Below are positions 25,321-61,089 of a stretch of 64,000 bases of DNA, in pieces; the stretch's first letter is position 1, and every line of letters starts with the position of its first letter. The notes under the pieces are model-generated. The model was not told where the DNA came from and searched no databases. It saw nothing but the letters and a program-made list of their open reading frames with translations. The position numbers were made by a program, and so were the translations under genes. The stretch is from positions 142,245 through 206,244 of IMG/VR virus record IMGVR_UViG_3300026484_000087; one strand, 5' to 3'.

Positions 25321-25352
25321 TAACTACTTAGGACATATGTCCTAAGTAGTTA
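25321..25352. terminator. 32-bp perfect palindrome
   Basis: TAACTACTTAGGACATATGTCCTAAGTAGTTA at the stop of the HNH-fusion gene. Confidence 0.75.
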
Positions 25353-26831
25353 CATCTTAACGATTTTTATAAGGTTATTAACCATGCCTATTTGATGGTT
25401 TATTAAACTATAATTAGTCATTGCTATAGATATCAAACTAGCATTATTATCTAGACCAGTAGATAATGCATGTAATGTAGATTTAGTTATTTCAAACTTA
25501 TTATCTTTACTAACAATATGTTCATGTAGCATATTAGTTTTTTCAGCTATCTCTTTAACTAAGCTATCTATTTTACTAAAATTAACCTTACCAAGTTTAT
25601 TTCCTAGAATGGCAGTATCTTCAGCAAGCTTAGGCAATGAAGTTAAATTTGGTACAAGTTTACCAACTGGCATTCTATCGTTGTTAGAGTTAACATCTAT
25701 AACCCCAGATAGATTATTTTTTATCTCATAAGCAACTTCTTCGGTTTTTTCAAAAAGTGTTTTCTTAGGTTTAAAAGATTTTCTGTAATCTTCATCAGAC
25801 ATTATCTTACTTAAGATGACATTTAACTCACTAAGAGAATCTATAATTAAAGAACCTAACATATGTTCATTTTTACTAAGTTTATTTTCAAGTTCTATTA
25901 GGTTAGTGTTTAAACCAATAACGACTGGGGTTTCTCTAGATTCTATACTAGCATAACTTTTATTCTTAATAATTCTCTTAAGAGAACTAATATCACTTCT
26001 AAGTTGTCTAAGTTCTTTATTGCTTTCACCAGATATACCACTTATGGTTTCTGTAACACCAGAGAATAATTCGCTAATAGAATTTAATCTATTTAAAACA
26101 AAGTTATTTATATTACTAATTAAACCATTTTCATTACTAAGCATATTAACCGCTTCATCTACTGATTCAAAACTAAGAGTTTCTTCTAACGTTACTAACT
26201 GATTAACTTTTTCCATATTCTTTTTCCTTTTATCCCATACATCTTGTATGTTCTGTGATTGACTACCCCATTTAAGATTGGTAGCATTACAATTCTCTTT
26301 ATTATCGTCCTTATGCATAACGACAAAACCTTTTGGACCAACTCCATGAAATGCAGTACAAACCAATATATGTACATACTCCATTTTACTTTTGGTGCTA
26401 CCATCTTTAAAAATAGATACTTTAAGATAGTGTCCAGCACTAACACCTTTAGTAAAATTACCTGTTTTCAATGTAAGTATTTCTCCAAGGTTACTCGCCA
26501 GATACTTACTAAATCCAGGTATAGGTTTCCATATTCTATCCATAGCATTTAATGGGACAGGTATCCTATTTGATACATCTACATTAACTGGCAACTCAAT
26601 TGGTATTATGTTTTTATGTATATAAGGAGCTTCCTCATCTACATATAGGCCATCATCTGATAGACTAAATACTTTATAGTACCATCCATCAAGTTTTCTA
26701 TGTTTTTTCTTAATAGCTTTAACAAGGTCTTTTAATGTCTTATACATTTTTATATAACCAGTGCTATTTACCTTAATTTCTATTTTTTTATTAAGTATAT
26801 CTGTTTTATAAATTGGTAAATATAATACCAC
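25350..26831 (-). CDS. NUMOD4-HNH endonuclease fused in frame to a putative head protein
   Basis: GTG start after AAGGAG. NUMOD4 WKPIPGFSKYLASNLG and HNH VHILVCTAF...HKDDNKENCNATNLKW. An internal AAAGGA RBS plus ATG at 26216 opens a 288-aa helical domain with S-x-E motifs. Confidence 0.75.
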   Translation of the reverse strand: MVLYLPIYKTDILNKKIEIKVNSTGYIKMYKTLKDLVKAIKKKHRKLDGWYYKVFSLSDDGLYVDEEAPYIHKNIIPIELPVNVDVSNRIPVPLNAMDRIWKPIPGFSKYLASNLGEILTLKTGNFTKGVSAGHYLKVSIFKDGSTKSKMEYVHILVCTAFHGVGPKGFVVMHKDDNKENCNATNLKWGSQSQNIQDVWDKRKKNMEKVNQLVTLEETLSFESVDEAVNMLSNENGLISNINNFVLNRLNSISELFSGVTETISGISGESNKELRQLRSDISSLKRIIKNKSYASIESRETPVVIGLNTNLIELENKLSKNEHMLGSLIIDSLSELNVILSKIMSDEDYRKSFKPKKTLFEKTEEVAYEIKNNLSGVIDVNSNNDRMPVGKLVPNLTSLPKLAEDTAILGNKLGKVNFSKIDSLVKEIAEKTNMLHEHIVSKDNKFEITKSTLHALSTGLDNNASLISIAMTNYSLINHQIGMVNNLIKIVKM

Positions 26832-36677: not shown

Positions 36678-39600
36678 TTATTTTATCTCAGTAGTATCTT
36701 TAGTAACCACATTAGGTTTATCTACAGTTTCATCTTCATAAACTATAGTTTTTAGTTCATTTATATTAACTAAACCATTTATATCTATTTCATTATTTAT
36801 AGAAATAGTATCTTTTGTTTTATCTAAACTACCTTTAAGTTTAGGACTATACATATCTACAGGAGTTCTATTATCGCCTATCACATTAGGTTTACTAGAT
36901 TTATCTCTATCCATATCATACATAATTGTTCTTGTTGTACTAACATTTATTTCACCTATTACTACATCCGTATTTATATTAGATGTTTTATTTGTTTCAA
37001 TATCTTTTGTTCTACTTAACTTAGGTTTAAACATTCCTACATCTACTTTACCATCAGTAGCTATTAAAGCTGGTGTACTATCTACCCCATCCTCATTACT
37101 ATATATAATAGTATTTAACTCGCTACTTATAGCAAGACCAGTAAGATCATTAACATTTATAACTTCAGTATCCTCTAATTCTAAAGTTTCTGTTTTTGGC
37201 ATAACTGGAACAAACATGTTGTCTAATTCATTATCTATAGAACCAACAAGTTCAGGTACTATAGTTTTAGCCAAATTGTTTTCCTCTACCCTACCAATAC
37301 CAGTAACATCCTTTTTGGTTTTACTACCTTTAATTGTATTGTCAACAACATATTCAGTATCTTTGAAAACAATCTCTACTGATTTATTTATTTTAGGTTT
37401 AAACATATCTACATTAGAACTCATATCACCTATTAATTCAGCATCATTGTTTGTATTTAAATCTTTACTATATAATAGGGCTTTAACAAACTTGCGATTA
37501 TATGTACCAGTGAATGTATCTGTAGTTAAAGTATATGTTTCATTTAACTTATATCCTTTAGCTGTACTAGTTGGACTAAACATATCATCTAGATCACTAT
37601 TTACAGAACCATATAGTACGGGGTTAAGGTCTCCCGCTATAACTGGTGACATATTAAGAAGTATACCATTGGTAGTTTTAACTCTTTTACTACCAACAAT
37701 AGTCTCAGTAATTATGCCATCTATATCATCGGCTCTATTGCTAATAACGTCTGTTACTAAAGGTTTGAATAGGTTAAGTGCAACATCATTGTTTCCTATT
37801 AAAGATCCAACTTCATATTCACTTATCTCACCATTTTCACCATACATTATTATTTTATTTATATCTTGTAGAACGTTACCTTTATAATTTATACCTTTAG
37901 GTATAGAATCAAGGATATCCTTTTCATCTACAGAACCTGTTTTAAAATCAGGTTTAAATAATGTTAATGTTGATAAATTAGTATTAAATTTACCTATAGG
38001 AGCAACATCTACCCATATATCTTTACTATTTATATCCATAGTAATTTTATTGGCATCACTTCTACTTGTACCAGAGACAGTACTCGTATTAATTGTAGTA
38101 TCCAAACCATCAACTTGTTCATTGGAGTTAACTCTAAACTTAGGATGATACATCTCTATTATGTTCTTAGTAGTATTGAAGTAAACATTAGGTTCTATAT
38201 CACCATCTATAACATTACTTGTATTATAGAACATCATTTCATTCTTACCAGTAACACTACCCATAGGAACATAGTTTTCACTGTAAGGATTTCTTACAAC
38301 TTCATCTATACCGTAAGTTATACCGTCAACTTTTGGAGAGAACATATCTATGGTTTTATAGTTTCTACTACCTCTAAGTACTGGCTTGCTTCCATCATTA
38401 GGTCTATTATCTATATCTTCTAATAATACTTCCATATGATTATTGATATATCTACCTTTACTAGTATCAAAGCTGCCAGCCACTATTCTATATGATTCAT
38501 TTATACTAAATACTTCAGATCTAGGCTTATAAAGTTTAGTATCAGCTTTTCTAACAGAACCGTATACGTTTGGTTTATTAGAGCTTTCTATATCCATTGT
38601 TTCATTAAACATAGTAAGTACATTATGATCATTATTTAAAGAACCATTGTATCCATAATTATTTTTCATTGGAACAAGATCTTCTGCTAATGGGTTATAG
38701 ATATTTGAAACATTTGGTTTAAAGTAATCCAAAACTCTCATACCAGTATCTATGATAGCAGTTGGTTTATTATTTTCTAAAATATCATCTGTATACATTC
38801 TAAGTTTGGTTGTATTTATTTGTACTCTACCAAAACCTTTGGTAAAGTTACTTACGAATGCTAATGTAGTATCCTCTACACTAGTATTTAAAGCTACAAT
38901 AGGATTAAACATATTTATAATACTATTATTAGTAGATACCTTAAATGTAGAAATTTCACTAGACCACAATTCTTTACTAATAACAGACATACTCACCATA
39001 TTTCTATGGTTATTAGTTTTACCCATAACAACCGTTTTGGATGCTGAATAATTTATACTAGATACTTCATCATTAGTTATGCCGCTAACTATAGGACTAA
39101 ACCAATTAAGTACGTCTTTATTAACGTGTCCTAGAACATTAGGTATGGTACTAAAATCCTCATATAGTTTAACATCCGTAACGCCTTTACCAAGATTACC
39201 ATACATACTTACTCTATATTCTATTTCAGAATTAAGTACTTCCCTTTCTTTCTTATCCATGCTAATATTAGGAGAATACATATTCACTGTACCAAATTCA
39301 CTAACAAAAGATAATACTGGAAGGGTGCTGTTTTCAAGATCATGATGTAATTGCATATCCATTTTAACAGGAGTATTTAAAACAGTACCTGATAATTTAT
39401 TTACGGTATTTATACCATCTATAAACGTTCTATCAAAACCACCATTGGATAACAGGATAGGACTATACATTGTTATAGAGGCTTTTTTGCTCCTACTTAT
39501 CATAGTTGTCTGTTCTACAATAATATCAGTTTTATCAACATGCATTGTAATAATATTATCATCAGTTCTAGATGAACCATGAATAAACTCATTTTCTGTT

Positions 39601-42600
39601 TTATCTATAACATCTACAATATCATTTATGTTTCCACTAACTATAGGAGAGAACCATTTAAGTAGTCTCTTACTTGTATTCATCACTAATGTAGGCATAG
39701 CATTATCGGTATTTAATCCAGTTTCCCCACTAACTATAAGTTTGGTTTCACCTCTTTTTATGTTAACGTTACTATTAAACTTATTACTTATGAATTTTAA
39801 ATCAAGAGTAATATTTAAAGTATCTGTTGTAAATGTTGGTTTAAAGAAATCAATGCCTTTTAAAGGAACATTGGCTATAAGAGTACTTGTCTCTTGATAC
39901 ATTTCAGAATCATAGTTCTCGATTCTTGTTTTTAAAGTATGGTCTTTAGCTATACCTTTAATATATGTATCTTTAAAATACTCAGTACTTTCTTTATTGT
40001 TTTTATCTATAAACGATCCTATTTTAGGAGAGTACATATTTAAACTAGACTCTATGTTTCTTATAAGATTAATAGAAGTCTCTCCAGTTATAGAATGTAT
40101 TCCATCAGACATAAGTAATTTAACCTTAGCCTTTTGTTTACCATAAGGAATCATGCTAGCGTTAAATACGTTGTCTATTGTTTTATAATAATCTTCATCA
40201 TTTTTACCACTATCTAAGCTAGGTCTAAACATATCTGGTATACCACCAATACTATAAGTAATATTAGGCATACTATAATTGAAAATACCTAAAGGCGTTT
40301 CCATAGTTATGTTTATACTATCTTGTTTAATGTAACCTGTTTGACCTCTATCTATAGTTAAAGAATCACTTTTGTTCATGGTCTTATCTGACATAGATTT
40401 AACTGTAGGTTTATACCAATCTAATAGTCTTCTGTTTGTACTCATAACCATTTCTGGTTTGCCATTTACTTCAACATTACTTGATATATCATAAAGCTTA
40501 AATTTGGTAACATCATTTATAAAATTACCATAACTTAAGTTAAATGAATTAGAACCTATGGTCTGAATTATATTATCAGACTTACTGTTAACTATCGGAC
40601 TAAATAGTCTAAAAGACAATGGTCCAGCAGTTGTGGTAATCGTAGGTGTATTAGAATAATCCAATTCTTTACTATACCACTCCATAGCAGTTTGGATGTA
40701 TCTTTTAACAACTCTACCAACTTTACTAGTCTCACTACTAGCTAATTGGATAATATCTTTCATATCATTTATTTTAGTACCTATATAAGGTCTAAACATA
40801 GTTAGATATGATTTATTGCTAAATACAACATCAGGCATTTCATTTTTAACATGTAGTACATTGGTTAACGCTAAACGTTCTTCAGGTTCGTATAACATTA
40901 ATTTAGGAGGATTTATTCTGGTATAACCTCTTGGTATCATCAATTCTATATCAGACTTTAAGAAGCATCCATAAGGAGCATCTCTGGCGGCCATATAACC
41001 ATAAAAGTCTTCAAGTGCTCTAAATGTACCTTCATGAATATCAATGATACCAGGAGTACTTATTGACATATTTGTATTATATCTAGTAGACATAACATCT
41101 AAACTATTTGTACTATTCATAAACTGTATTGTGCTAGAAGATAAGTTTTTAACTATCTTAATATATTTGTCAACCATTTCATTAACATCATCTTTATCAA
41201 AATAGAATCCAGTAAATGCATAAAGAACCTTATTTAATGTTTCTTTATAATCATATACGTCTGTAAAATAGAAATCCACAAATTGGTTAGCCATTAGTTC
41301 GTCTATAGTACTATCTCCTTGATTGAAGATAATAGTCTCTTTCATATGTAAACGTTTATACATTGTTTTTATAGAATTGTTTATGAGCATATCGTTAGAG
41401 TTTGTTGCTATATTCCAAATTACTGAATTAAAACTATTCAAGTCTTTTAAATATTGATTAAATATATCTCTATCTAAGTATGTTAGTCTATCTGGTCTTA
41501 ATTCTATAAGTTTTTTAGCTATGTCATATGTTATAGTAGGGTTTATCATGTTATAATTAAGGGCATCCACTGTTATAACGCTATTTAAAAGTTTATTTGC
41601 AGTATAAGATGGAATCTTTGGATTAACATTGCCACTAATAACTGCTAGTAACTTAAGAATTAAGAAAGCTGCTTGCTTAGCATCTAAGTCATAAGTAAAT
41701 CCAGTATTATTATCTATAAATGTTATTGATGTTTTATAAATATCTCTAAATGCCATTTGTATAAAGTTATCTAGAACCATTTTTAGTTCTATCTTATTCT
41801 CAACTACATAAGATCTATTCACTTTTATCTTAAATGTTTTAGTTTTTTGTTTATTGAATTTATTTTTATCCAATTTATATTCTAAGGTATTGTCGTAAAA
41901 ATTCGTATCTTTTATAACCATATCGTTATCTACAAATGCTTTACTAAATTGTCTAAGCAATAAAGCCTTACCACTTGTATCATCATTATCATCTATTAGA
42001 TAATAATCATTTCTTCTTTTAGATATGAACCTATTCTCTTTTTTATCATATATTGGCTTAGTTATATCTGTTAAATTCAATAAGTCTTCATCTGGTAAAC
42101 CGTTTAGAAGTTCTACCTCAGCTACGCCTATACCATTTTCAGTAAGTATCTTTTCTATAAGTATATCAAGAGTTTTGTTTTTACCTATATTATTCTTGAT
42201 ATATCTAAGATTCTTATATAACCAAAACCTAGTTTCTTTACTAAGAACCTTAACATCTACATCTATACCATAATTAGATCTAAAAAATTCATAGATATGA
42301 AAACTGTGTGCTTCAGATGTAAAGATATAATCCTGTCTTATATTCAATGTTTTTAAAACCATTTTAGTATAGAGTGTTGCTAATAGTGACGGTATATAAA
42401 GATCATCAATTATGCCATAATCTCTAATATGCCAACGTAGAAAATAGTTCTTAGAGAACTCATTAAGTCTATGTATTAAATTGGTTTCCTGCTCTTCAAC
42501 TAGATAAGGACTATGTGCAACTAATTCTCCATTAGTGCAGTTAATGACATCGTTTATATCAAGTCCATATATAATACCCTTTATAAGCAATTCATCTTCA

Positions 42601-42935
42601 GGATACTCTGCTACTAAATCATTATAGTATGTATCAAATTTCTTTAATTCATTTCTAGTAGTCTTATATTTATCAAGGAGTTCTTTAGTTAGTTTTTGAA
42701 CAGAACCATCTTCAATGATAGTTATATTTATTCGATGGTCTAATTTATGATATTCTCCAGATATGTTCATAAAGTATTTCCAGGTAGTACGATCCTCTGG
42801 TTCATCTCCTAGAATACTTGTGCCGTATATTTTAACAAGTTCATTGTTAATTTGTATTGCTGTATCTATACTGAGAATGATTAAACTTTTAATCAATCTT
42901 ACAGTATCTTCAATATATTTTGTAGTTGTAATCAT
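36678..42935 (-). CDS. Large virion structural protein (phiKZ-like baseplate/tail N-domain) with long C-terminal repeat array
   Basis: The N-terminal ~600 aa carry WKYF.N.SGEYH..D, EEQE..LI and LYKNLRY motifs. The remainder has about 24 degenerate ~50-55-aa repeats ending in (M/L/W/Y)(F/Y)(S/K)P. Confidence 0.7.
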   Translation of the reverse strand: MITTTKYIEDTVRLIKSLIILSIDTAIQINNELVKIYGTSILGDEPEDRTTWKYFMNISGEYHKLDHRINITIIEDGSVQKLTKELLDKYKTTRNELKKFDTYYNDLVAEYPEDELLIKGIIYGLDINDVINCTNGELVAHSPYLVEEQETNLIHRLNEFSKNYFLRWHIRDYGIIDDLYIPSLLATLYTKMVLKTLNIRQDYIFTSEAHSFHIYEFFRSNYGIDVDVKVLSKETRFWLYKNLRYIKNNIGKNKTLDILIEKILTENGIGVAEVELLNGLPDEDLLNLTDITKPIYDKKENRFISKRRNDYYLIDDNDDTSGKALLLRQFSKAFVDNDMVIKDTNFYDNTLEYKLDKNKFNKQKTKTFKIKVNRSYVVENKIELKMVLDNFIQMAFRDIYKTSITFIDNNTGFTYDLDAKQAAFLILKLLAVISGNVNPKIPSYTANKLLNSVITVDALNYNMINPTITYDIAKKLIELRPDRLTYLDRDIFNQYLKDLNSFNSVIWNIATNSNDMLINNSIKTMYKRLHMKETIIFNQGDSTIDELMANQFVDFYFTDVYDYKETLNKVLYAFTGFYFDKDDVNEMVDKYIKIVKNLSSSTIQFMNSTNSLDVMSTRYNTNMSISTPGIIDIHEGTFRALEDFYGYMAARDAPYGCFLKSDIELMIPRGYTRINPPKLMLYEPEERLALTNVLHVKNEMPDVVFSNKSYLTMFRPYIGTKINDMKDIIQLASSETSKVGRVVKRYIQTAMEWYSKELDYSNTPTITTTAGPLSFRLFSPIVNSKSDNIIQTIGSNSFNLSYGNFINDVTKFKLYDISSNVEVNGKPEMVMSTNRRLLDWYKPTVKSMSDKTMNKSDSLTIDRGQTGYIKQDSINITMETPLGIFNYSMPNITYSIGGIPDMFRPSLDSGKNDEDYYKTIDNVFNASMIPYGKQKAKVKLLMSDGIHSITGETSINLIRNIESSLNMYSPKIGSFIDKNNKESTEYFKDTYIKGIAKDHTLKTRIENYDSEMYQETSTLIANVPLKGIDFFKPTFTTDTLNITLDLKFISNKFNSNVNIKRGETKLIVSGETGLNTDNAMPTLVMNTSKRLLKWFSPIVSGNINDIVDVIDKTENEFIHGSSRTDDNIITMHVDKTDIIVEQTTMISRSKKASITMYSPILLSNGGFDRTFIDGINTVNKLSGTVLNTPVKMDMQLHHDLENSTLPVLSFVSEFGTVNMYSPNISMDKKEREVLNSEIEYRVSMYGNLGKGVTDVKLYEDFSTIPNVLGHVNKDVLNWFSPIVSGITNDEVSSINYSASKTVVMGKTNNHRNMVSMSVISKELWSSEISTFKVSTNNSIINMFNPIVALNTSVEDTTLAFVSNFTKGFGRVQINTTKLRMYTDDILENNKPTAIIDTGMRVLDYFKPNVSNIYNPLAEDLVPMKNNYGYNGSLNNDHNVLTMFNETMDIESSNKPNVYGSVRKADTKLYKPRSEVFSINESYRIVAGSFDTSKGRYINNHMEVLLEDIDNRPNDGSKPVLRGSRNYKTIDMFSPKVDGITYGIDEVVRNPYSENYVPMGSVTGKNEMMFYNTSNVIDGDIEPNVYFNTTKNIIEMYHPKFRVNSNEQVDGLDTTINTSTVSGTSRSDANKITMDINSKDIWVDVAPIGKFNTNLSTLTLFKPDFKTGSVDEKDILDSIPKGINYKGNVLQDINKIIMYGENGEISEYEVGSLIGNNDVALNLFKPLVTDVISNRADDIDGIITETIVGSKRVKTTNGILLNMSPVIAGDLNPVLYGSVNSDLDDMFSPTSTAKGYKLNETYTLTTDTFTGTYNRKFVKALLYSKDLNTNNDAELIGDMSSNVDMFKPKINKSVEIVFKDTEYVVDNTIKGSKTKKDVTGIGRVEENNLAKTIVPELVGSIDNELDNMFVPVMPKTETLELEDTEVINVNDLTGLAISSELNTIIYSNEDGVDSTPALIATDGKVDVGMFKPKLSRTKDIETNKTSNINTDVVIGEINVSTTRTIMYDMDRDKSSKPNVIGDNRTPVDMYSPKLKGSLDKTKDTISINNEIDINGLVNINELKTIVYEDETVDKPNVVTKDTTEIK

Positions 42936-50652: not shown

Positions 50653-52821
50653 TTAAACTGTTGCAAAGTTTTTAGTAACTTTACCTAGTGACTCTTCAAT
50701 ACCACTAATGTTAATAACAGTTAGAATAGGTAGTTGAGGAACATGTAAGAATCTTGGTAATGTAGAAAGTTCTCTAACGATGCTTCCACCTCTGTTAGCA
50801 ACAACATCTAAAGAAACTTCTGGAGACCAGAAACATACACCAAAACCAAGTGGGTTAACTTTTTCATTTTTACTTGCACCTGTATCACCAAATGAAATGA
50901 ACATTTTACCTTTAACTAGTGGATTTTGAGTAGTAGCTAAATGTACTTCAAACTCATCACCAATTTCAATTTTACCAGTACCATTTGTTAAGTATTGTGC
51001 AGTTCTACTATCTGTACCAATGATTACCGAAGTTTTACCAGCAACACCACCATTAAGAACTTTACTAGCGATAGCGTAGTTAGATTCAATGAACATTTTG
51101 ATAACTTCATCTTTAATTTTACCAGTTAATGTACCTTTAATATCTTCCATTTTCTCACCAGATCTAACTGAGTCAATGTTGTTAGCAATATTTAAGTTTG
51201 TTTCATTATAGTAAGCATCTACAAAGAATCTTGATACACCAAGAATTGCAGCATCTTTAACATTACCATTAGATGTAATTTGTCTTAAAGTTTCAGAGAA
51301 TGAAACAAGAGTATTTACAGCTTCAAGAGACATTTTGATACCAGTGAATGCTACTTGTGAAGCAAGGTATGTTGCATCGTTGTCAGTATCATTAGAGTTA
51401 CCAACTGTTTTAAGAATTGTTACACCTGATCTAACTGGAACAGTATAGATTTGGTTATGAATATCAACACCAACTAATTGACCTCTTTGTCTAATGTTAG
51501 AGTTAGTTGTATAAGCTTCTACAGAGTAAGCTCTAGGTTTACAAGTTTCAATAACTGCAGCAATTGCTTTGTAGTTATCATTATCTTCATCAAGAATATT
51601 TCCACCAGCATCAAGAACTTCAACAAGTTTAACAGAAGAACTGTATACAGCAACATCACCAATTTGAGTATTACCATCACCATGAAGAACAAGTTCAACT
51701 CTAACAGTATAGTTTTGAGCAAGTTGTGCTAAGATTTCAGAACCAGCACCATTCCATTGTTTAGTAGCAGCAGTATTTAAGATCATTCCATCTGTTGTGA
51801 AAGAAAGCATTAAATCTTTGTTATGATCTTGTGTGCTATATGTAAAGTTTGAATGTGGTAACATAGAAATGTTAAATTTGAATGTTTCAGTAATCTCTTT
51901 ATCATCAGCATCTTTACCAGTAAGATCAAAGAATACATCTTGAACTTGAACTCTTCTATCAAGAGCATCAGTATTATCCATAACACCTTTAGCAAGTTGT
52001 GCATCAGTTTGAGAAACACCTAATACAGAAATAGCTTTACCCATTTTTAATGGAGCAGTAGTGATTTTCTCACCTTTTTCAGTATTTACAGTTTTAAGAT
52101 CAGCAGCAAGTACTGCAGCATTTTCTTCTCTTAATACAGGAACAAGTAGGTTTTTATCTACAGATAAGATAGTTGGATCAACGATAGCTTTAACAATTGA
52201 TTTTTTATTAAATTTACCTCTATCAGATGCACCATTAGTACCTCTTGTAACTTCATCATAAAGATTGATAACTCTAGCTTCAATACTAGCACCAGAAGAT
52301 GTAGGATCAATTGTAACAGTTGGGAAGAATAGTTCACCAAATGCATCTTGTTTAGAAGCAAGTAAGTTATATACAACAGAGAAGTAAACAGCAGAGTTAA
52401 TAGTTTGACCATCAAAAGACTCTACAGAGATATTTTCTGTATCCATGATATCTTCAACACCAAGTGCCATAGCATCTACAGTACCAACAACATTTTGTGC
52501 AGTAACAGCTTTAAGGTTATTTAAATTTTGTCTAGCAGCAGTTGGATCCATTGCAAGACCAGCAACTAGTTGTGCAGCTTTTAATTGTGCAGCAGTTGGA
52601 TCAAAATCTTCCATACCTTCAGAAGAGATAACTGAATCAATTGTATTTTGTACAATTTCATTAAGAGAGTCTAAACTAGACTTAGCTGTAGCGGCAGTAC
52701 CTTCATCCATGCTTTCTGAAGAGATTACAACTTGTGTAATTTCTGGTCTATTAGTAAGACCGTGTACTGTTAAACCTGTTTTCATTCCGTCAATAAGACC
52801 TACAATGTTTGTTTTATCCAT
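50653..52821 (-). CDS. Major capsid protein (phiKZ gp120-like)
   Basis: 722 aa with QDAFGELFFPT.TIDP, DNTDALD and N.RQRGQL motifs, S-x-E sites in the prodomain (ISVE/SF) and strongly biased codon usage. Confidence 0.88.
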   Translation of the reverse strand: MDKTNIVGLIDGMKTGLTVHGLTNRPEITQVVISSESMDEGTAATAKSSLDSLNEIVQNTIDSVISSEGMEDFDPTAAQLKAAQLVAGLAMDPTAARQNLNNLKAVTAQNVVGTVDAMALGVEDIMDTENISVESFDGQTINSAVYFSVVYNLLASKQDAFGELFFPTVTIDPTSSGASIEARVINLYDEVTRGTNGASDRGKFNKKSIVKAIVDPTILSVDKNLLVPVLREENAAVLAADLKTVNTEKGEKITTAPLKMGKAISVLGVSQTDAQLAKGVMDNTDALDRRVQVQDVFFDLTGKDADDKEITETFKFNISMLPHSNFTYSTQDHNKDLMLSFTTDGMILNTAATKQWNGAGSEILAQLAQNYTVRVELVLHGDGNTQIGDVAVYSSSVKLVEVLDAGGNILDEDNDNYKAIAAVIETCKPRAYSVEAYTTNSNIRQRGQLVGVDIHNQIYTVPVRSGVTILKTVGNSNDTDNDATYLASQVAFTGIKMSLEAVNTLVSFSETLRQITSNGNVKDAAILGVSRFFVDAYYNETNLNIANNIDSVRSGEKMEDIKGTLTGKIKDEVIKMFIESNYAIASKVLNGGVAGKTSVIIGTDSRTAQYLTNGTGKIEIGDEFEVHLATTQNPLVKGKMFISFGDTGASKNEKVNPLGFGVCFWSPEVSLDVVANRGGSIVRELSTLPRFLHVPQLPILTVINISGIEESLGKVTKNFATV

Positions 52822-55076: not shown

Positions 55077-55105
55077 AGTAGTATACGGTTAAACCGTATA
55101 CTACT
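55077..55105. terminator. Bidirectional terminator-like hairpin
   Basis: AGTAGTATACGGTT-A-AACCGTATACTACT. Confidence 0.75.
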
Positions 55106-55304
55106 TACCTATTTTAATGTTATCTATAATTTTACCAAGTAAATCTTTAGTAAAATCTGATCTAAACATCATAAAGATTGAACTATATAATGCAACAAAA
55201 CCAGTAGTTTCAATAACATCCGGATCCATATTCTTATAAACAGTAAACATATATACTGCTATGAAAATAAAGAAAGCCAATGTACTTTTCCAATTCTTAA
55301 ACAT
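55101..55304 (-). CDS. Small two-TM membrane protein, holin candidate
   Basis: 67 aa with two hydrophobic helices and a charged C-tail. AAAGGA RBS. Confidence 0.4.
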   Translation of the reverse strand: MFKNWKSTLAFFIFIAVYMFTVYKNMDPDVIETTGFVALYSSIFMMFRSDFTKDLLGKIIDNIKIGK

Positions 55305-55376: not shown

Positions 55377-55586
55377 ATGGAATATATTTTAGACATAATT
55401 GGCATACTATGTTTTATGGTGATACTTTATTCATTTACAAATAAAGAAACTATGCCGTGTACAAATGAACAGTGTGACGGTACTATGGAAAGCTTTATTT
55501 ATACTGGCGATGGTGATGGACCAGCTCCAGATCATTTACATTTTAAATGCAATAAGTGTGGAAAAGAAGAACAAATATTACAATAG
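55377..55586 (+). CDS. Small membrane-anchored Zn-ribbon-like protein
   Basis: N-terminal TM, then CxxxxC and CxxC. AAAGGA RBS. Confidence 0.55.
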   Translation: MEYILDIIGILCFMVILYSFTNKETMPCTNEQCDGTMESFIYTGDGDGPAPDHLHFKCNKCGKEEQILQ

Positions 55587-55618
55587 TATACTAAGAGGTT
55601 TAACCTCTTAGTATACTA
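55584..55618. terminator. Bidirectional terminator-like hairpin closing the signalling cassette
   Basis: TAGTATACTAAGAGGTT-T-AACCTCTTAGTATACTA. Confidence 0.75.
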
Positions 55619-56755
55619 GAAATCATACTCTATTTCAAATCTTATATCATGCTGGGGTTTTCTAGAATCTACGTCATATCTTTTAAATCCGCCATTTTGT
55701 ATAACATTATATCCATCTGGCTCATACCTACTTAATCTAAATTTGGCATGCATTTTATTGGTTGCTTCTAGGTCTATATAAACTGTATTCTGTTTACCAT
55801 TTTTAAACATACTATATGTAGATAAAAATCTACCAGTATTTAAGCTAACATAATCATCTTTTATAAGACTATGTTCAAATCCAATTGTCGCATCCCTATT
55901 TATATATGGTACCGTAATGTATTTATTAAAACCCAATACAAAAGAATATCCAGTTAACGTATTACCTAAATTCTCACTATGTGAATAAGCCCCATAGTTA
56001 AAAAACGTATAACCACTATCCATAGAATCATCAAGTATATAAGTGTAACCAAATATATCTGCATTTATATCCCCACCTAACTTTTCGCATGCTTTACCAT
56101 TTATCTTAAAATAATTAAATGATAAATTGTTTTTACTACCTTTAAAACTATACATTAAAGACAGACCACCAACTTCTTTATATGTAGGAGCATACATCTG
56201 GTCTTCATTAATTAGAATAGAATTAAAGAAAACATCTTTAGATAAATAACCTATGTTCATTACATGATTGCCTACATGATAATTTAAATAAGCTCCATCT
56301 GCTATATAATTACTCATCAATGGGTTTATGTTATTCTTACGATCTTGTGGTAAAGTAACAACCGATCCATTATCTGTTCTAAAATCTATTTTACCAGCAA
56401 TGAAACTAAGATTATCATTAATTATATATTTATAATACATCTCATCAATGATTATTAAAGTTATGCTATCCTTTTCATTAAGACTAGTATCTAAATCAGA
56501 TTTATAATCATAATTAAGATACATTATTTCAGTTGTAAGTGATATCATACCGCCATCAACATTCTTTTTATATCTACTATAAAGTAATATGTCCTCCGTT
56601 GCTATATTACCGTAATTCCTATCAACATTAAGGTAACTTAAATGTAATTCATTTTTTAATAAATAACCTTTATCTTTAAGTTCATTGCAACTAACAACAG
56701 TTGTAAATGTAAATAAAGCTAAAATGATTAAAAGTATTTTTTTATTTGTTATCAT
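55616..56755 (-). CDS. Outer-membrane beta-barrel porin-like protein
   Basis: Signal peptide, alternating amphipathic beta-strands rich in Tyr/Gly/Phe, and C-terminal beta-signal IRFEIEYDF. ATG 56755 follows AGGAG. Confidence 0.72.
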   Translation of the reverse strand: MITNKKILLIILALFTFTTVVSCNELKDKGYLLKNELHLSYLNVDRNYGNIATEDILLYSRYKKNVDGGMISLTTEIMYLNYDYKSDLDTSLNEKDSITLIIIDEMYYKYIINDNLSFIAGKIDFRTDNGSVVTLPQDRKNNINPLMSNYIADGAYLNYHVGNHVMNIGYLSKDVFFNSILINEDQMYAPTYKEVGGLSLMYSFKGSKNNLSFNYFKINGKACEKLGGDINADIFGYTYILDDSMDSGYTFFNYGAYSHSENLGNTLTGYSFVLGFNKYITVPYINRDATIGFEHSLIKDDYVSLNTGRFLSTYSMFKNGKQNTVYIDLEATNKMHAKFRLSRYEPDGYNVIQNGGFKRYDVDSRKPQHDIRFEIEYDF

Positions 56756-57023
56756 CAAAAGCTCCTTTAGTTATTTCTATATCACTTCTGTAAAGGCCTT
56801 TTATGCAATCACAGATTTTTCTTTTTTTACTGTAAGAAATTTCTTTATATAAATATTGATCTATTTTATTTTTCTTACATACTCTATACCAACCTTTATT
56901 AGACTTAATATCGTAGTCTATTAAATCTCTATTATATAAAATACCACAACTTGCAATATCAGAATATAGATTTATATTAAATATTAAGATTAGTCCTAAA
57001 AAAACAAAAAAATTTTTGTTCAT
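56742..57023 (-). CDS. Small secreted 4-Cys protein
   Basis: Signal peptide MNKNFFVFLGLILIFNINLYS, with a ~72-aa mature part carrying four Cys. Confidence 0.65.
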   Translation of the reverse strand: MNKNFFVFLGLILIFNINLYSDIASCGILYNRDLIDYDIKSNKGWYRVCKKNKIDQYLYKEISYSKKRKICDCIKGLYRSDIEITKGAFDDNK

Positions 57024-57025
57024 AT

Positions 57026-58417
57026 TTACTCCTTTTTATAAGTATAAGGTTCTACTGGTATCAACAGTTTAAAAATAGTCCCCTCAGATGACGTCTTATG
57101 TAGACTTATCTCTCCTTTATATTTTATAAGTGTTTCTCTTATCACATACATGCCGAGTCCCCTTCCTGATTCAGACGTAAATAATTCTGGTTTATAAAAT
57201 ATCTTTTTAAATAACGATGTAAAGAAACTAGTTTTTTCATGTATTATGTCACCTGATAAAGTTTTACTAGATACTCCATATGCAAATATTAAATCATATT
57301 CTTCCTTAATAATAGGTTTATTATTTTTACCAAGTACACCTGTACCATTATCTATACAATACAGTTGTAACGTTGAATTATTTATTAATTCACATTCTAT
57401 TATAACTTTACTACATTTTGCTTCTACCGAATTTGTAACTAAATTAGAAAGTATATTCATATACTCACCATTTGGTAGACCTCTCAAATGTAATGATTCT
57501 AAAAGTTTCATATTCTTTATTTCATACTCAAAGTGTCTACTTGTAAATATAGATGTAGTAGCAAATAAATTCTTAGTAAGCATTGCCATATTTTTGTTAC
57601 CGTTACTATAGCGATTATCTTTGCTCTCTCTTAATAGAGCTAGTACGCCATGTAGTCTATCTATAGAATTACTTATCTTTTCAATGTAGTCTAATATAAC
57701 CACTCTTGGTAAATATTCATCGGAATTTCTTACTTTTAACTTCATGCTGCAAGTTTTACAATCATCTACATATTGTGTTTGTATAGCGAGCCTTATCTCA
57801 TCAAATAAATCCTTTATTACTGTTATTGGACCAAGCATCTCATGGTGCATCGAACCAGCAACAGTATATTGTAACTTACCTTCTAGAACCGTCTTAACGT
57901 TTTTGTTAGCTAACAATGCCGCAGCTACCTCATTTCTAGCATTTCTAAAATATATAAAAGCATACCATATCAAGAAAAATATAGTAACTGTATAGAATTG
58001 ATTCATTACAACAGAATAATCATATGTATTTAATTCTATAGTCATTTTATGCTTGTCATATTCTATATCAAATGTATCCTTTATAACAATATCTCTTATC
58101 TTTTTTAAGTAAGTATTATCAGTAATTGTAGCATAATCATCATCTCTCATTAAGACATTATTCCTAGATATGTCTGGACTGAAATAAACGCCATCTAACG
58201 TTATTGACTTACAATTACTAGCATAACAAAATAATGATATATCTATGTCATCACTATGATATATTTTATCTATATTAGTCTTATATTCGTTTATAAGATA
58301 AAGTCTTTTATTGTACTCAGTATACATGAATATTATAAACAAACTAATGGCTAATAGAATAGAATGTTTAAAATATATTGCCAGTATATTCCTATTTATT
58401 ATCCATTTATTTTCCAT
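57026..58417 (-). CDS. Membrane sensor histidine kinase
   Basis: Two TM helices flank a ~100-aa extracytoplasmic domain. H-box MHHEMLGP, N-box NLVTNSVEA, G1 DNGTG, F-box LIFAYG and G2 GRGLGMY. Confidence 0.88.
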   Translation of the reverse strand: MENKWIINRNILAIYFKHSILLAISLFIIFMYTEYNKRLYLINEYKTNIDKIYHSDDIDISLFCYASNCKSITLDGVYFSPDISRNNVLMRDDDYATITDNTYLKKIRDIVIKDTFDIEYDKHKMTIELNTYDYSVVMNQFYTVTIFFLIWYAFIYFRNARNEVAAALLANKNVKTVLEGKLQYTVAGSMHHEMLGPITVIKDLFDEIRLAIQTQYVDDCKTCSMKLKVRNSDEYLPRVVILDYIEKISNSIDRLHGVLALLRESKDNRYSNGNKNMAMLTKNLFATTSIFTSRHFEYEIKNMKLLESLHLRGLPNGEYMNILSNLVTNSVEAKCSKVIIECELINNSTLQLYCIDNGTGVLGKNNKPIIKEEYDLIFAYGVSSKTLSGDIIHEKTSFFTSLFKKIFYKPELFTSESGRGLGMYVIRETLIKYKGEISLHKTSSEGTIFKLLIPVEPYTYKKE

Positions 58418-59030
58418 CTTTCTTAATTACCTTTACTATTTTATCATAAATAACTTTATATCTAGTATCTGCTTTAGACATATAGAAATCATCAAATTTT
58501 AATTTAGTATTATCCTCAAATTTAGTTATATATTGACTCATAAGTGGATCACGTTTATTAAGACTATGTGCTGTACAAAATACTATTTGACACTCAGGAA
58601 ACTTTTCTAATATCTCTATAGCGATATCAACTCCATCGTATTCAATTATCTTACCATTAGAGAGTTTTATTGACATTTCTAGAGTCATGTCTAATATAGC
58701 TATACTAAGATCATCTATCTCTTCTAGTAATTTATGCGTAGTGAATCCTGCATAAACTCCTATTGCCTCATACACTTTAAATTCTTTAAGTATATCAAAC
58801 TCATACTGTCTCTTTACTCTGTTAAAGTCTAATTCATATAATGTAAATTGCTCTACGAAGTCATCCATAAGTAATATACTTTTACTAGCCTCTTCATTAC
58901 CCTTAATCAATATAGGATCCATAAGATTATATTGTATGCTTTCTGGGAGATTACTATTTTCTTCTTTTAAATCTGTATCAACTTTAGGTTTCTTATTTAA
59001 ACCAAATATATCTTTCAATTTATTAAACAT
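58407..59030 (-). CDS. Single-domain response regulator (receiver only)
   Basis: Acid pocket LLMDD, phosphoacceptor AILDM, switch FCTA and conserved Lys YMSK. There is no output domain. Confidence 0.8.
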   Translation of the reverse strand: MFNKLKDIFGLNKKPKVDTDLKEENSNLPESIQYNLMDPILIKGNEEASKSILLMDDFVEQFTLYELDFNRVKRQYEFDILKEFKVYEAIGVYAGFTTHKLLEEIDDLSIAILDMTLEMSIKLSNGKIIEYDGVDIAIEILEKFPECQIVFCTAHSLNKRDPLMSQYITKFEDNTKLKFDDFYMSKADTRYKVIYDKIVKVIKKDGK

Positions 59031-59045
59031 CTTTTAGTCCTTTTT

Positions 59046-59504
59046 CTAAATTTTTAATATTGTAGTCAGTATGTATTTCTTCATACTTGAGAATGTATCG
59101 GATATGAGACCAATAACGTATTTGGTAGCTTCTGGATCATATAGATATCCTAACCAAATAAGGAAGAATACCAACATCCCACCGCCTATTATATATGGTA
59201 AATTATGAGTTGTAAATAATTTTGCTTTACTTTTCTTAACATCACCATTAACTTGCTCTGTCATTTCTAATAGCTTTTCCATAATGTTAGTAACATCAGT
59301 TAATAAAATCTCGTTTTCATTTTTCATTAGACTTACGCTATGTTTATTATATGTATGTATTAGAACTATAACTTCATGGAGATCGTCAGGAACATCTTTA
59401 AGTTTTAAAAGTATATTTAAGTCATCTGCTTCTATTCTATTGTTTCTTAAGTCGTCTTTTATTCTGGCTATAGCATCTTTAACAGTAATTATTTTCTTTT
59501 CCAT
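59046..59504 (-). CDS. Membrane protein with C-terminal TM helix
   Basis: 152 aa with hydrophobic IIGGGMLVFFLIWLGYLY. AAAGGAGG RBS; first gene of the cassette. Confidence 0.7.
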   Translation of the reverse strand: MEKKIITVKDAIARIKDDLRNNRIEADDLNILLKLKDVPDDLHEVIVLIHTYNKHSVSLMKNENEILLTDVTNIMEKLLEMTEQVNGDVKKSKAKLFTTHNLPYIIGGGMLVFFLIWLGYLYDPEATKYVIGLISDTFSSMKKYILTTILKI

Positions 59505-59554: not shown

Positions 59555-59584
59555 TAAGTAGACTACAATTAAGTAGTCTACTTA
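59555..59584. terminator. Terminator-like hairpin opening the signalling cassette
   Basis: TAAGTAGACTAC-AATTAA-GTAGTCTACTTA. Confidence 0.7.
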
Positions 59585-59922
59585 ACGCCGTATCTAATAA
59601 AATGATAGCTTCTAACACTGCTAACCATAATAAATCTAGTCACTGGTCCTATTTCCAAGGACTCTAGACATTCTTCAAATATGTCATCAGCAAGTTTATA
59701 CATTTCTTTATCAGTTAGGTAATCATGTAAGATTACCGCTGGCAAATAATCAGATCTATTTGGAGGTAAAAAAATCCAAAATAATCTTGGAACATCAGCC
59801 CCATTTGTTTCGTATCCAGCTGGTACAGTTATCCCATTATAGGTAAAATCTTCTAATAAGACATATCTATCTTTATGCAATGGACTTGTTTTAACAGCTG
59901 AATATATTTCACTTCTTGTCAT
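59578..59922 (-). CDS. DUF1353-family protein
   Basis: ITVPAGYETNGADVPRLFW and AVILHDYL motifs. Confidence 0.8.
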   Translation of the reverse strand: MTRSEIYSAVKTSPLHKDRYVLLEDFTYNGITVPAGYETNGADVPRLFWIFLPPNRSDYLPAVILHDYLTDKEMYKLADDIFEECLESLEIGPVTRFIMVSSVRSYHFIRYGVK

Positions 59923-60580
59923 TATAATCCTTTATAATTTTTTTACAGCTTATAATATGCCTAAATGGATGATCTCCTCTGTTATAAAGTGTTCTATCAT
60001 TAACATATTTAAAGCACATCTTATCCTTACCATTTATAATAAAGATCTTATAAAATACTATAGGTAACCTCATATCAGAAGTTGAAAAATTCTTTTCACC
60101 ATATTTTATCAAATCCAATACCTGAATGGAACCGTATATATTAGAAATATTTCTACTATATGTTTCTACTCTCTTCCAATAATACCTATTTACAGAAGAA
60201 TCCTGAGGAACGCCATTTACGCCTAAAACATAAGTCATTTTTAGAACATCTTTATCATAGTCAAATGTAGCATCATTAGCTAAATGACCTATATCCATGC
60301 GTTGTTTATTTTTATAATAAGCTTTCTTATATGGCCAATATTCCTTTGGTATACCTTTTGGATACCTCCAACTAAAACGTTTTTTGATATTTCTTTTATT
60401 GTTATTGTTTGATTCTACAGAATACAAAACTGCTTTAGTACCCTTATATTTATAATCGTAACAAGATTTATAAATCTTGTTACTGTATATGAAATCACAT
60501 TTATTTTTATTTAAAAAATAATCTGATAGTCCTGATGAGAATAAATTTATTGTTAATAATAGGACTATTAATATTTTCAT
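59909..60580 (-). CDS. Secreted DNA/RNA non-specific endonuclease (NucA-like)
   Basis: Signal peptide MKILIVLLLTINLFS, DIGHLA (DRGH-type), N..PQ...VN..YW and P..FYKI. Confidence 0.8.
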   Translation of the reverse strand: MKILIVLLLTINLFSSGLSDYFLNKNKCDFIYSNKIYKSCYDYKYKGTKAVLYSVESNNNNKRNIKKRFSWRYPKGIPKEYWPYKKAYYKNKQRMDIGHLANDATFDYDKDVLKMTYVLGVNGVPQDSSVNRYYWKRVETYSRNISNIYGSIQVLDLIKYGEKNFSTSDMRLPIVFYKIFIINGKDKMCFKYVNDRTLYNRGDHPFRHIISCKKIIKDYNDKK

Positions 60581-61089
60581 GTCACTTTCACTTTACTGTA
60601 GATGTTATTTATCTGTTTGATTGTCATTCTTTTATAATTGTGTTTCTTATCTTTTAATTTAAGAACACGTTTATTATTACCATCTTGTGCAGCAACATGG
60701 ATCCAACCATGTGGGAAATACTCAGCTATAAGTTCTTTGTACTCTAAATTTTTATTTATATACTTAAGTATTTTCATATACTTAATCTTCTTATTATATG
60801 GTTTAAAATCAACAGCAAAACCATAAGCATGATTAGAATGTTTAGAACTACCTATGGCTAAACATAAGGCAACAGATCTATAGCCAGACGTTATTTTAAT
60901 AGGACCAAACTTATCTCTAAGAGGTTGTAACACCGTATCTACTAAAAACTGTATTCTTTTTAAATACTTAGCTGGCATATCGTTGTTTATACCTTTTCTA
61001 AGTGCAGTATCTGAAATCAAGAATTCATCCAATGTGAAATTCTTAGATAATCTTATTTTTTTAGCTTGTTTTAATGTAATTACTTTCAC
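60577..61089 (-). CDS. Peptidase M15A (D-Ala-D-Ala) putative endolysin
   Basis: SKNFTLDEF, ITSGYRS, S.H..G.AVD and WIHV zinc-ligand motifs. Confidence 0.85.
   Translation of the reverse strand: MKVITLKQAKKIRLSKNFTLDEFLISDTALRKGINNDMPAKYLKRIQFLVDTVLQPLRDKFGPIKITSGYRSVALCLAIGSSKHSNHAYGFAVDFKPYNKKIKYMKILKYINKNLEYKELIAEYFPHGWIHVAAQDGNNKRVLKLKDKKHNYKRMTIKQINNIYSKVKVT

What the first reader, a model, noticed from the sequence alone, without database searches (positions are those of the whole stretch)
55616..56755. Phage-encoded outer-membrane porin with possible lipobox
Seen: a beta-barrel pattern, C-terminal EYDF and a signal ending in VVS-C that fits the lipobox consensus. Inference: it could import a signal or nutrients for the infected cell, remodel the surface to exclude other phages, or couple to the kinase. 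It also implies a diderm host.
Basis: partly seen in the sequence, partly recalled or inferred. Interest (0 to 1): 0.6.

Follow-up and report, generated by a model that had tools for sequence, protein, structure and literature searches.

The report
Jumbo-phage porin with a periplasmic partner
A giant phiKZ-like phage from a hydrothermal vent carries its own outer-membrane porin, always made together with a small periplasmic protein that is predicted to dock into the pore from below, and both sit at the end of a phage-encoded sensor-kinase operon; phage porins are known, but this pairing is not.

Summary
Window 55616-56755 (- strand) is a real gene of 379 aa under strong purifying selection. 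It has a signal peptide, a formal lipobox (VVS-C, Cys23) and a C-terminal Y-x-F beta-signal.

With six relatives aligned, AlphaFold2 gives about 16 strands (pLDDT 68.8). The model matches 16-stranded trimeric porins (OmpM1, OprP, OprB, VhChiP, Omp32) at Z 21-23. No Pfam, NCBIfam or PHROG model hits it. Among 1.8 billion representative proteins it has only about six relatives. Wherever enough flanking DNA is held to tell, these lie in phiKZ-like phage contigs.

The lipobox cysteine occurs in only the two closest of six members, so lipidation is not a family trait.

New here: every porin gene is preceded by an overlapping gene for a roughly 93-aa secreted protein, p93. A complex prediction puts p93 on the periplasmic mouth of the barrel with its tail in the lumen (score 0.84, best control 0.16). 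The pair ends an operon holding an intact sensor histidine kinase and a divergent receiver protein. One related phage keeps the kinase but lacks both p93 and the porin.

Best reading: an accessory, gated outer-membrane channel, possibly feeding the phage's two-component sensor. Its function is inferred, not shown.

The parts
55616..56755 (-). Porin-fold outer-membrane protein, 379 aa including signal peptide; stop codon at 55616-55618.
   Evidence: ORF and RBS. AF2 model with about 16 strands, pLDDT 68.8, pTM 0.68. Foldseek top 50 are all OM channels. VIA Z 21-23 to 16-stranded porins. dN/dS 0.07.
56687..56755 (-). Signal peptide, residues 1-23, ending in VVS-C. The lipobox is formal and not conserved in the family.
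   Evidence: Sequence. Lipobox regular expression met in 2 of 6 members. Alignment.
56285..56395 (-). Most conserved segment, residues 121-157, including the long loop between strands 5 and 6. This is the position of the constriction loop L3 in classical porins.
   Evidence: Alignments A1 and A2. Strand map. Low model confidence for residues 127-146. Predicted contacts with the p93 tail at 129, 138 and 140-142.
55619..55642 (-). C-terminal beta-signal, residues 372-379. Tyr at -3 is invariant and the terminal residue is F or W in all six members.
55584..55618 (.). 16-bp perfect hairpin overlapping the porin stop codon. It is the likely two-way terminator that ends the operon.
   Evidence: Fold at -22.3 kcal/mol, z -6.1, 0 of 200 shuffles as good. 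Sequence.
56742..57023 (-). p93: small secreted protein with invariant Cys26 and Cys73, the D-I-K-x-x-x-G-W motif and an acidic tail. Its stop overlaps the porin start by 14 nt. It is the predicted periplasmic partner or plug of the porin.
   Evidence: Alignment A4. Overlaps of 8-14 nt in all six loci. Complex prediction 0.84 against a best control of 0.16. Contact residues more conserved than the rest, p 0.004.
57026..58417 (-). Sensor histidine kinase, 463 aa: two TM helices around a roughly 105-aa periplasmic domain with a conserved Cys pair, then H-box (His192), N, G1 and G2 boxes.
   Evidence: HATPase_c E 1.3e-10. The only HATPase_c hit in the 206-kb record. Invariant motif residues in A5. 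Domain-by-domain comparison.
58407..59030 (-). p207: divergent stand-alone receiver (REC-like) protein with invariant D56, D57, D114, T153 and K186.
   Evidence: Alignment A3. Its homologue in L016 (hhalign probability 98.4%, E 6.5e-15) hits PF00072 at E 3e-4, below the cut-off. p207 itself gives no PF00072 hit.
59046..59504 (-). p152: coiled-coil protein with one C-terminal TM helix. It is the first conserved gene of the p152-REC-kinase core.
   Evidence: The same order is seen in L002, L005, L009/L010, L017 and, at 30% kinase identity, in L016.

Best explanation
The gene encodes a 16-stranded outer-membrane beta-barrel of the general porin fold. The infected diderm host would export it through Sec and insert it through BAM, which recognises its conserved C-terminal Y-x-F/W signal.

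The porin does not act alone. It is translationally coupled to p93, a small disulfide-bonded periplasmic protein. p93 is predicted to sit on the periplasmic mouth of the barrel and push its acidic C-terminal tail up the lumen towards the conserved L3-like loop. The unit is therefore a porin with its own periplasmic plug or adaptor, that is, a gated channel.

The pair is an accessory two-gene module attached to the 3' end of a phage operon for a two-component system (p152, a REC-like protein and a periplasm-sensing histidine kinase). I infer that it gives the kinase controlled access to something outside the cell. Either it admits a solute or signal into the periplasm, or it relays an outer-membrane event through p93.

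Shown: gene, selection, synteny and motifs. Predicted by models: fold and complex. Inferred: gating and coupling to the kinase. N-terminal lipidation is possible in this copy but is not a property of the family.
For: Fold:
- The AF2 model has about 16 strands, with long loops only on one side.
- VIA gives Z 21-23, rmsd 2.6-3.8 A over 264-292 residues, to OmpM1, OprP, OprB, VhChiP, OmpT, Omp32 and PorB. Scores for 18-stranded channels drop to Z 15-16.
- All Foldseek top-50 hits are OM channels, the best at E 8e-11.
- The Atlas feature score is 0.98 to porin clusters, with structural TM 0.6-0.7.

Targeting: a signal peptide is present in all six members, with Y at -3 and F/W at -1.

Real and selected: dN/dS is 0.07.

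Partner:
- A p93 gene overlaps the porin start by 8-14 nt in all six loci.
- p93 and the porin are lost together in L017.
- The complex score is 0.84 against a best control of 0.16. That mark was reached by 58 of 80 solved complexes and 2 of 110 mismatched pairs. Partner pLDDT is at least 84, and the runs agree in at least 81% of contacts.
- All 39 porin contact residues lie on periplasmic turns, the lower lumen wall or the L3-like loop, and none on outer loops. This is the side a secreted periplasmic protein can reach.
- The p93 contact residues are its conserved motif and tail: conservation 0.71 against 0.53, p 0.004.

Operon: the genes overlap or abut from p207 to the porin and end in a strong hairpin.

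Kinase and receiver: the kinase motifs are intact, and the REC quintet is conserved.
Against: - Everything structural is prediction from very shallow alignments (6 and 5 rows). The L3-like loop itself has pLDDT below 50.
- Porin-side contact residues are no more conserved than the rest (p 0.33).
- No sequence model of any porin family matches.
- Coupling to the kinase rests on gene order alone. L017 keeps an intact kinase, with an equally conserved sensor domain, without p93 or the porin. More distant kinase relatives (L016, L018) have other neighbours.
- No RNA data exist for these genes.
- Trimer formation, the p93-kinase contact and pore selectivity were not tested.
Confidence: 0.55

Rival explanations
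1. It is a plain nutrient or solute uptake porin, an auxiliary metabolic gene. It raises outer-membrane permeability for a limiting substrate during infection. It works independently of the kinase and merely shares a transcript with it.
For: The best structural matches include substrate-specific porins: OprP for phosphate, OprB for sugar and VhChiP for chitin oligomers. Virus-labelled porins exist in BFVD. A viral OmpL-type porin next to amtB and glnK has been reported as a nutrient-uptake module (PMC8115048). The kinase persists without the porin in L017.
Against: It does not explain the strict, translationally coupled partnership with p93 or the predicted insertion of p93 into the lumen. Fold similarity says nothing about substrate. 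Unlike the reported AMG porins, no recent host donor is visible: there are no bacterial relatives in 1.8 billion representatives or in the GTDB genomes.
Confidence: 0.2
2. It is a surface-remodelling or superinfection-exclusion device. The phage porin replaces or displaces the host porin that serves as receptor, as Lc of phage PA-2 does. Alternatively, p93 alters the barrel from the periplasmic side, as T5 Llp does to FhuA.
For: There are precedents for phage porins (Lc and NmpC of lambdoid phages, from my own knowledge; NmpC in prophage DLP12 is mentioned in papers listed). T5 Llp is a precedent for a small phage protein binding a barrel from the periplasm to block receptor function (PMC9586334). 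The module is accessory and varies between close relatives, as exclusion genes often do.
Against: In the T5 case the barrel is a host protein, whereas here both partners are phage genes. The extracellular loops are not hypervariable beyond the rest. The phage's receptor is unknown. There is no similarity to Lc or NmpC-type Porin_1.
Confidence: 0.12
3. It is an export route. p93 is the cargo, not a plug. It is threaded outward through the barrel to the cell surface or medium, perhaps as a signal that the phage kinase senses. That would make the four genes a self-contained communication circuit.
For: The p93 tail is predicted inside the lumen. The gene order of receiver, kinase, small secreted protein and membrane channel recalls peptide quorum-sensing operons (my own knowledge of agr-type systems). 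16-stranded TpsB transporters are among the structural matches, but weaker ones: FhaC at Z 16.6 and CdiB at 15.8.
Against: There is no POTRA domain and no energy source. p93 has a conserved disulfide pair and a folded core (partner pLDDT at least 84), which is unlikely to pass through a 16-stranded barrel. The best matches are diffusion porins, not secretion barrels.
Confidence: 0.08
4. It is a true outer-membrane lipoprotein, with Cys23 acylated after signal peptidase II cleavage, and the lipid anchor is essential to its function.
For: The lipobox pattern is met, with Cys at position 23 and two lysines in the n-region. The seven-residue spacer to strand 1 would place the anchor at the periplasmic rim.
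Against: The cysteine is present in only 2 of 6 members, and those two are 83% identical, so this is a single event. The other members have A/G-type signal-peptidase-I ends. V-x-S also fits signal peptidase I. The 83% relative has Asp at +2.
Confidence: 0.2

Closest known systems
16-stranded trimeric bacterial porins (OmpM1 8bym, OprP 2o4v, OprB 4gf4, VhChiP 5mdo, Omp32 1e54, PorB 3a2s)
   Same: Predicted fold and strand number, at Z 21-23. Signal peptide and C-terminal aromatic beta-signal. A long conserved loop between strands 5 and 6, where L3 lies. In VhChiP a peptide plugs the pore from the periplasmic side (my own knowledge), as predicted here for the p93 tail.
   Different: Structure-based alignments share only 8-12% identity and no Pfam or NCBIfam porin model hits. 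It is encoded by a phage. The plug is a separate, co-translated protein rather than the porin's own N-terminus. The trimer state is unknown.
Phage- and virus-encoded porins (Lc of phage PA-2 and NmpC of prophage DLP12; viral OmpL-like porin in marine viral contigs; BFVD entries labelled OmpC or Porin O/P)
   Same: A porin gene carried in a phage genome as an accessory gene.
   Different: Those are close copies of host porin families, sit in temperate phages or short viral contigs, and have no dedicated partner. This one belongs to a sequence family seen only in a clade of phiKZ-like jumbo phages. It has an obligate partner and lies in a two-component operon.
RcsF/OMP sensory complex of the Rcs phosphorelay
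   Same: A small cysteine-containing envelope protein with a segment inside the lumen of an OM barrel, linked to a histidine-kinase pathway (PMC4942254, PMC9907809).
   Different: RcsF is a lipoprotein threaded by its N-terminal linker and uses host housekeeping OMPs. p93 has no lipobox, is predicted to use its C-terminal tail, and has a dedicated barrel. A signalling link to the kinase is not shown.
T5 Llp bound to FhuA
   Same: A small phage protein binding the periplasmic face of an OM beta-barrel (PMC9586334).
   Different: Llp is a lipoprotein that targets a host 22-stranded TonB-dependent transporter in order to block the receptor. Here the barrel is itself a phage product.
   Same: A porin-like OM barrel of similar size, mainly in Campylobacterota. 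Language-model resemblance is 0.95 at rank 7.
   Different: No HMM match at E <= 1 for any of the six members. Other porin clusters rank higher.

Membership tests
General 16-stranded porin fold (outer-membrane beta-barrel superfamily) | Closed antiparallel barrel of 16 strands with short periplasmic turns and long outer loops | tested here: met
   DSSP of the AF2 model shows 16 long strands, and the long connections fall only on alternate (outer) positions. Z 21-23 to 16-stranded porins. Prediction only; mean pLDDT 68.8.
General 16-stranded porin fold (outer-membrane beta-barrel superfamily) | N-terminal Sec signal and C-terminal aromatic beta-signal for BAM | tested here: met
   All six members have a hydrophobic leader, Y at -3 and a terminal F or W.
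General 16-stranded porin fold (outer-membrane beta-barrel superfamily) | Loop L3 between strands 5 and 6 folded into the lumen as the constriction | tested here: inconclusive
   A 24-residue loop at the right place is the most conserved part of the family. It is modelled at pLDDT below 50, so its path is unknown.
General 16-stranded porin fold (outer-membrane beta-barrel superfamily) | Homotrimer and measurable channel conductance | not tested
Conductance needs a bench assay.
Pfam porin families (Porin_1, Porin_4, Porin_5, Porin_O_P, OprB, Alginate_exp) and DUF3373 | Significant match to the family HMM | tested here: not met
   No such hit at E <= 1 for the query or any of its five relatives. 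NCBIfam and PHROGs gave none either. A profile search against PDB sequences gave none.
Bacterial lipoproteins (signal peptidase II substrates) | Lipobox with an invariant cysteine at the end of the h-region | tested here: inconclusive
   The pattern is met in this protein and its 83% relative and absent from the other four members. SignalP/LipoP were not available, and acylation is not testable here.
Two-component system (context genes) | Histidine kinase with H-box and N, G1 and G2 boxes | tested here: met
   HATPase_c E 1.3e-10, above the cut-off. H192-E193, N325/N329, D356-x-G358-x-G360 and G420-x-G422 are invariant in A5.
Two-component system (context genes) | Receiver domain with the acidic pair, phospho-acceptor Asp, Thr/Ser and Lys | tested here: inconclusive
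   D56, D57, D114, T153 and K186 are invariant. p207 itself has no PF00072 hit. Its L016 homologue hits at E 3e-4 with 21 bits, below the 30.2-bit cut-off.
RcsF/OMP-type interlocked sensor complex | The partner is a lipoprotein threaded through the barrel lumen | tested here: not met
   p93 has no lipobox in any of five members. Only a tail-in-lumen pose is predicted.

The most novel reading that the evidence does not exclude
A lytic-type jumbo phage carries a complete trans-envelope sensory chain of its own. It consists of an outer-membrane barrel, a periplasmic adaptor lodged in that barrel, an inner-membrane histidine kinase and a receiver protein. With it the phage could read the outside world or the state of the host envelope during infection and adjust its programme, as a viral counterpart of RcsF/OMP-Rcs or FecA-FecR signalling.
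Probability: 0.25. Interest if true: 0.85.

Novelty: new variant of a known kind. Interest (0 to 1): 0.55.

Why it matters
Phage-borne porins have mostly been seen as host-derived accessory genes of temperate phages. This one is a sequence-orphan porin family confined to a deep branch of phiKZ-like jumbo phages. It has a dedicated periplasmic partner and a fixed place behind a phage two-component system.

If the pair gates solute or signal entry for the kinase, it would show that large lytic phages install their own sensory hardware in both host membranes. That would open a testable route into how jumbo phages perceive their environment.

It also offers a compact porin-plus-plug pair for structural work. 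It supports a diderm host for an uncultured vent phage.

Tried and rejected
- Sequence family scans of the porin (Pfam, NCBIfam, PHROGs, PADLOC) gave nothing meaningful. A PDB profile search gave only a chance mannosidase hit at E 0.11.
- megablast of the region and tblastn of the porin against 50,697 phage records found no match.
- Degenerate-pattern scans with the six-member alignment found nothing new in IMG/VR or the GTDB genomes. In JGI metagenomes they found only the already known loci.
- The first AF2 run with three sequences was unusable (pLDDT 35.9), so I did not search with it.
- Two long repetitive proteins in the exhaustive search (P0007 and P0009, many short stretches, E 1e-6 to 5e-4) were set aside as low-complexity matches.
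- The 399-aa and 795-aa genes that follow the distant kinase in L016 are not porin relatives and have no signal peptides.
- PF00072 finds no receiver anywhere in the 206-kb record, so the REC assignment of p207 rests on motifs and one transitive sub-threshold hit.
- Host identification through the MAG that holds L016 failed because the record is not held. There is no tRNA in the window. No RNA run holds the region, so I did not use read laying.
- A lysis role (a spanin substitute) was considered, because an M15 peptidase lies upstream on the same strand. I rejected it as unsupported: no known outer-membrane disruptor is a large barrel, and the module is absent from a close relative.

Full report
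**1. The observation**

Window 55616-56755 (- strand) is an intact ORF of 379 aa. An AGGAG box lies six bases before the ATG.
- a leader with two lysines and a 15-residue hydrophobic run ending in VVS-C (Cys23);
- a C-terminus reading ...EIEYDF;
- alternating beta-type sequence in between.

A lipobox pattern of the PROSITE type, recalled from memory and run as a regular expression, is met at Cys23. The gene is not a chance frame. It has relatives at 83, 46, 31, 29 and 26% identity. dN/dS against the 83% relative is 0.07, at dS about 1.4.

**2. It is phage DNA**

The window is the last 64 kb of a 206-kb IMG/VR virus record estimated to be 77% complete. Close to the gene lie:
- a PhiKZ-type major capsid protein (E 6e-132);
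- a divergent DnaB helicase (E 1e-103);
- an M15 peptidase, a non-specific endonuclease and a DUF1353 protein.

A protein of more than 2,490 aa with a phage lysozyme domain fits a phiKZ-like tail lysozyme. The capsid protein is at most 34% identical to that of any cultured phage. Nearly all of the 215 matching phages infect Gram-negative hosts. GC content is an even 27-33% across the window. The best-holding sequencing run is labelled hydrothermal vent metagenome.

**3. Fold**

No Pfam, NCBIfam, PHROG or PADLOC model matches the protein. A profile search of PDB sequences also gives nothing.

AlphaFold2 failed with three sequences (pLDDT 35.9). With six it gave pLDDT 68.8 and pTM 0.68, showing 16 long strands. 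The long connections (126-149, 172-191, 300-319, 347-367) all fall on the same, outer, side. The other side has turns of 2-6 residues, as in porins.

- Foldseek against the PDB returns only outer-membrane channels in its top 50, the best being OmpM1 at E 8e-11.
- The Foldseek-independent aligner gives Z 21-23, rmsd 2.6-3.8 A over 264-292 residues, to 16-stranded trimeric porins: OmpM1, OprP, OprB, VhChiP, OmpT, Omp32 and PorB. 18-stranded channels reach only Z 15-16.
- The ESM Atlas agrees, through its own model and through features.

The most conserved stretch of the family, residues 121-157, covers the loop between strands 5 and 6. That is where the constriction loop L3 lies in classical porins. 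The loop itself is modelled with low confidence. All six members end in a hydrophobic-x-Y-x-F/W beta-signal.

I conclude that this is an outer-membrane barrel of the general porin fold. Because it needs BAM and an outer membrane, the host is a diderm. It is not a sequence member of any curated porin family, and not of DUF3373.

**4. Lipobox**

Only this protein and its 83% relative have the cysteine. The other four members end their leaders in LNA/S, LYG/G, SFA/S and LAG/E. V-x-S before Cys23 also suits signal peptidase I. Lipidation is therefore possible in this copy but is not a family trait. I put it at about 0.2.

**5. How rare the family is**

- The word-index search of 5.8 billion proteins found two relatives.
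- The exhaustive HMMER search of 1.8 billion representatives found seven hits at E < 1e-3. Four are full-length relatives, one is a fragment and two are repetitive chance hits.
- Nothing was found in 50,697 phage records, in IMG/VR or in the GTDB species genomes.

Four of the five relatives lie on contigs that show the kinase-p93-porin order: L002, L005 and L009/L010 with the DnaB helicase gene as well, and L011 too short for more. The fifth contig, L008 (2.7 kb), holds only the tail of p93 and the porin.

**6. The constant companion, p93**

Immediately upstream of every porin gene is a gene for a 89-100 aa protein. It has a signal peptide, invariant Cys26 and Cys73, a D-I-K-x-x-x-G-W motif and an acidic K-G-A-F-D-D tail. 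Its stop codon overlaps the porin start by 8-14 nt in all six loci. This includes the 62 bases that precede the porin on the short contig L008. p93 has no lipobox.

In contig L017 the kinase is 60% identical to ours. There the kinase is followed directly by a hairpin and the p67 gene, and p93 and the porin are both missing. The two genes are thus gained or lost together.

**7. Predicted complex**

The mature porin and mature p93, each with its own alignment, score 0.84 (ipSAE, median of three runs) against a best control of 0.16. That mark was reached by 58 of 80 solved complexes and 2 of 110 mismatched pairs. Partner pLDDT is at least 84, and the runs agree in at least 81% of contacts. The tool says these counts hold only roughly, because my own alignments were used.

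The 39 porin contact residues lie in these places:
- the N-terminal segment;
- the periplasmic turns 114-117, 244-245, 286-288 and 330-333;
- inward-facing alternate residues in the lower halves of strands 2-8;
- positions 129, 138 and 140-142 of the L3-like loop.

None lies on an outer loop. A secreted periplasmic protein can only reach that side, so the pose is topologically sensible.

On p93 the contacts are the conserved motif (37-47) and the tail (83-93). These residues are more conserved than the rest (0.71 against 0.53, permutation p 0.004). The porin side shows no such enrichment (p 0.33). The model supports binding but does not show it.

**8. The operon**

From p207 to the porin, the genes overlap or are 2 nt apart. 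p152 lies 15 nt upstream. A 16-bp perfect hairpin overlapping the porin stop codon ends the unit (-22.3 kcal/mol, z -6.1).

The 463-aa kinase has two TM helices around a roughly 105-aa periplasmic domain with a conserved Cys pair. Its H, N, G1 and G2 boxes are intact. It is the only HATPase_c protein in the record.

p207 keeps an Asp-Asp pair, a central Asp, a Thr and a Lys in receiver-like order. Its homologue in L016 (hhalign probability 98.4%) hits Response_reg at E 3e-4, below the cut-off. p207 itself does not hit. I read it as a divergent stand-alone receiver, and this assignment is inconclusive.

The p152-REC-kinase trio extends to a contig with only 30% kinase identity, where the downstream genes are unrelated.

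**9. Mechanism**

Shown or directly read: the gene, its selection, its leader and beta-signal, the coupled partner, the operon, and the joint presence or absence of the pair.

Predicted: the 16-stranded porin fold and the docking of p93 into the periplasmic mouth.

Inferred: the pair forms a gated channel, and it serves the phage kinase either by admitting a ligand to the periplasm or by relaying an outer-membrane event through p93.

Against obligate coupling: L017 keeps a kinase whose sensor domain is as conserved as in porin-bearing relatives.

Four rivals remain open:
- a plain nutrient porin;
- surface remodelling or superinfection exclusion;
- export of p93 through the barrel;
- a true lipoprotein role.

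**10. Comparison with what is known**

Phage-borne porins are known. Examples are Lc and NmpC of lambdoid phages (my own knowledge; NmpC appears in papers listed), a viral OmpL-type porin next to amtB (PMC8115048), and several virus-labelled porins in BFVD.

There are also precedents for a small envelope protein lodged in or under a barrel: RcsF/OMP (PMC4942254, PMC9907809) and T5 Llp-FhuA (PMC9586334). In both, the barrel is a host protein and the partner is a lipoprotein.

A comparative survey of 224 jumbo phages does not mention porins, and mentions histidine kinases only in passing (PMC7824862). A five-term literature search on jumbo-phage two-component systems turned up no paper whose title or abstract describes such a system.

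I therefore rate this a new variant of a known kind: a sequence-orphan phage porin with a dedicated periplasmic partner, placed behind a phage two-component system.

No alternative genetic code was used.

Noticed in passing
window 57026-59504 (- strand); L016:6839-9425: A phage-encoded two-component core is conserved from this phage to a contig with only 30% kinase identity. It consists of p152, a divergent stand-alone receiver (p207) and a periplasm-sensing histidine kinase. No DNA-binding output domain is present. p207 has look-alike clusters among other Uroviricota.
   Followed up: partly
L017:4745-6269: A related phage, with a kinase 60% identical, has the kinase followed directly by a hairpin and the p67 gene. 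p93, the porin and p69 are all absent. The gene caller had also cut off the kinase's first TM helix by choosing a late start.
   Followed up: yes
window 55080-55102 and 55585-55617: Two perfect palindromes share the arms AGTATAC...GTATACT (2 found, 0.03 expected). They bracket the two small genes p67 and p69. The second overlaps the porin stop codon. They look like a phage-specific terminator type.
   Followed up: partly
window 55377-55586 (+) and 55101-55304 (-): p69 has an N-terminal hydrophobic helix and two Cys-x-x-Cys pairs, like a zinc ribbon. p67 is a small protein with a conserved hydrophobic stretch, present in all related contigs.
   Followed up: no
window 1-7620 (+): A giant ORF runs off the 5' end of the window (more than 2,490 aa) and has a phage lysozyme domain at residues 2170-2297. 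It resembles the phiKZ tail lysozyme protein. A second giant ORF of 2,085 aa at 36678-42935 (-) has no family hit.
   Followed up: no
window 25350-26831 (-): An ORF with HNH_3 and NUMOD4 motifs, which is a likely homing endonuclease.
   Followed up: no
window 59578-61089 (-): An M15 peptidase (likely endolysin), a non-specific endonuclease and a DUF1353 protein lie on the same strand directly upstream of the signalling operon. The same order is conserved in the related contigs.
   Followed up: no
window 50653-52821 (-): The PhiKZ-type major capsid protein is at most 34% identical to any of 215 cultured relatives. This phage therefore belongs to a deep, uncultured branch. The best matches are Burkholderia and Ralstonia jumbo phages and one Bacillus phage.
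   Followed up: partly
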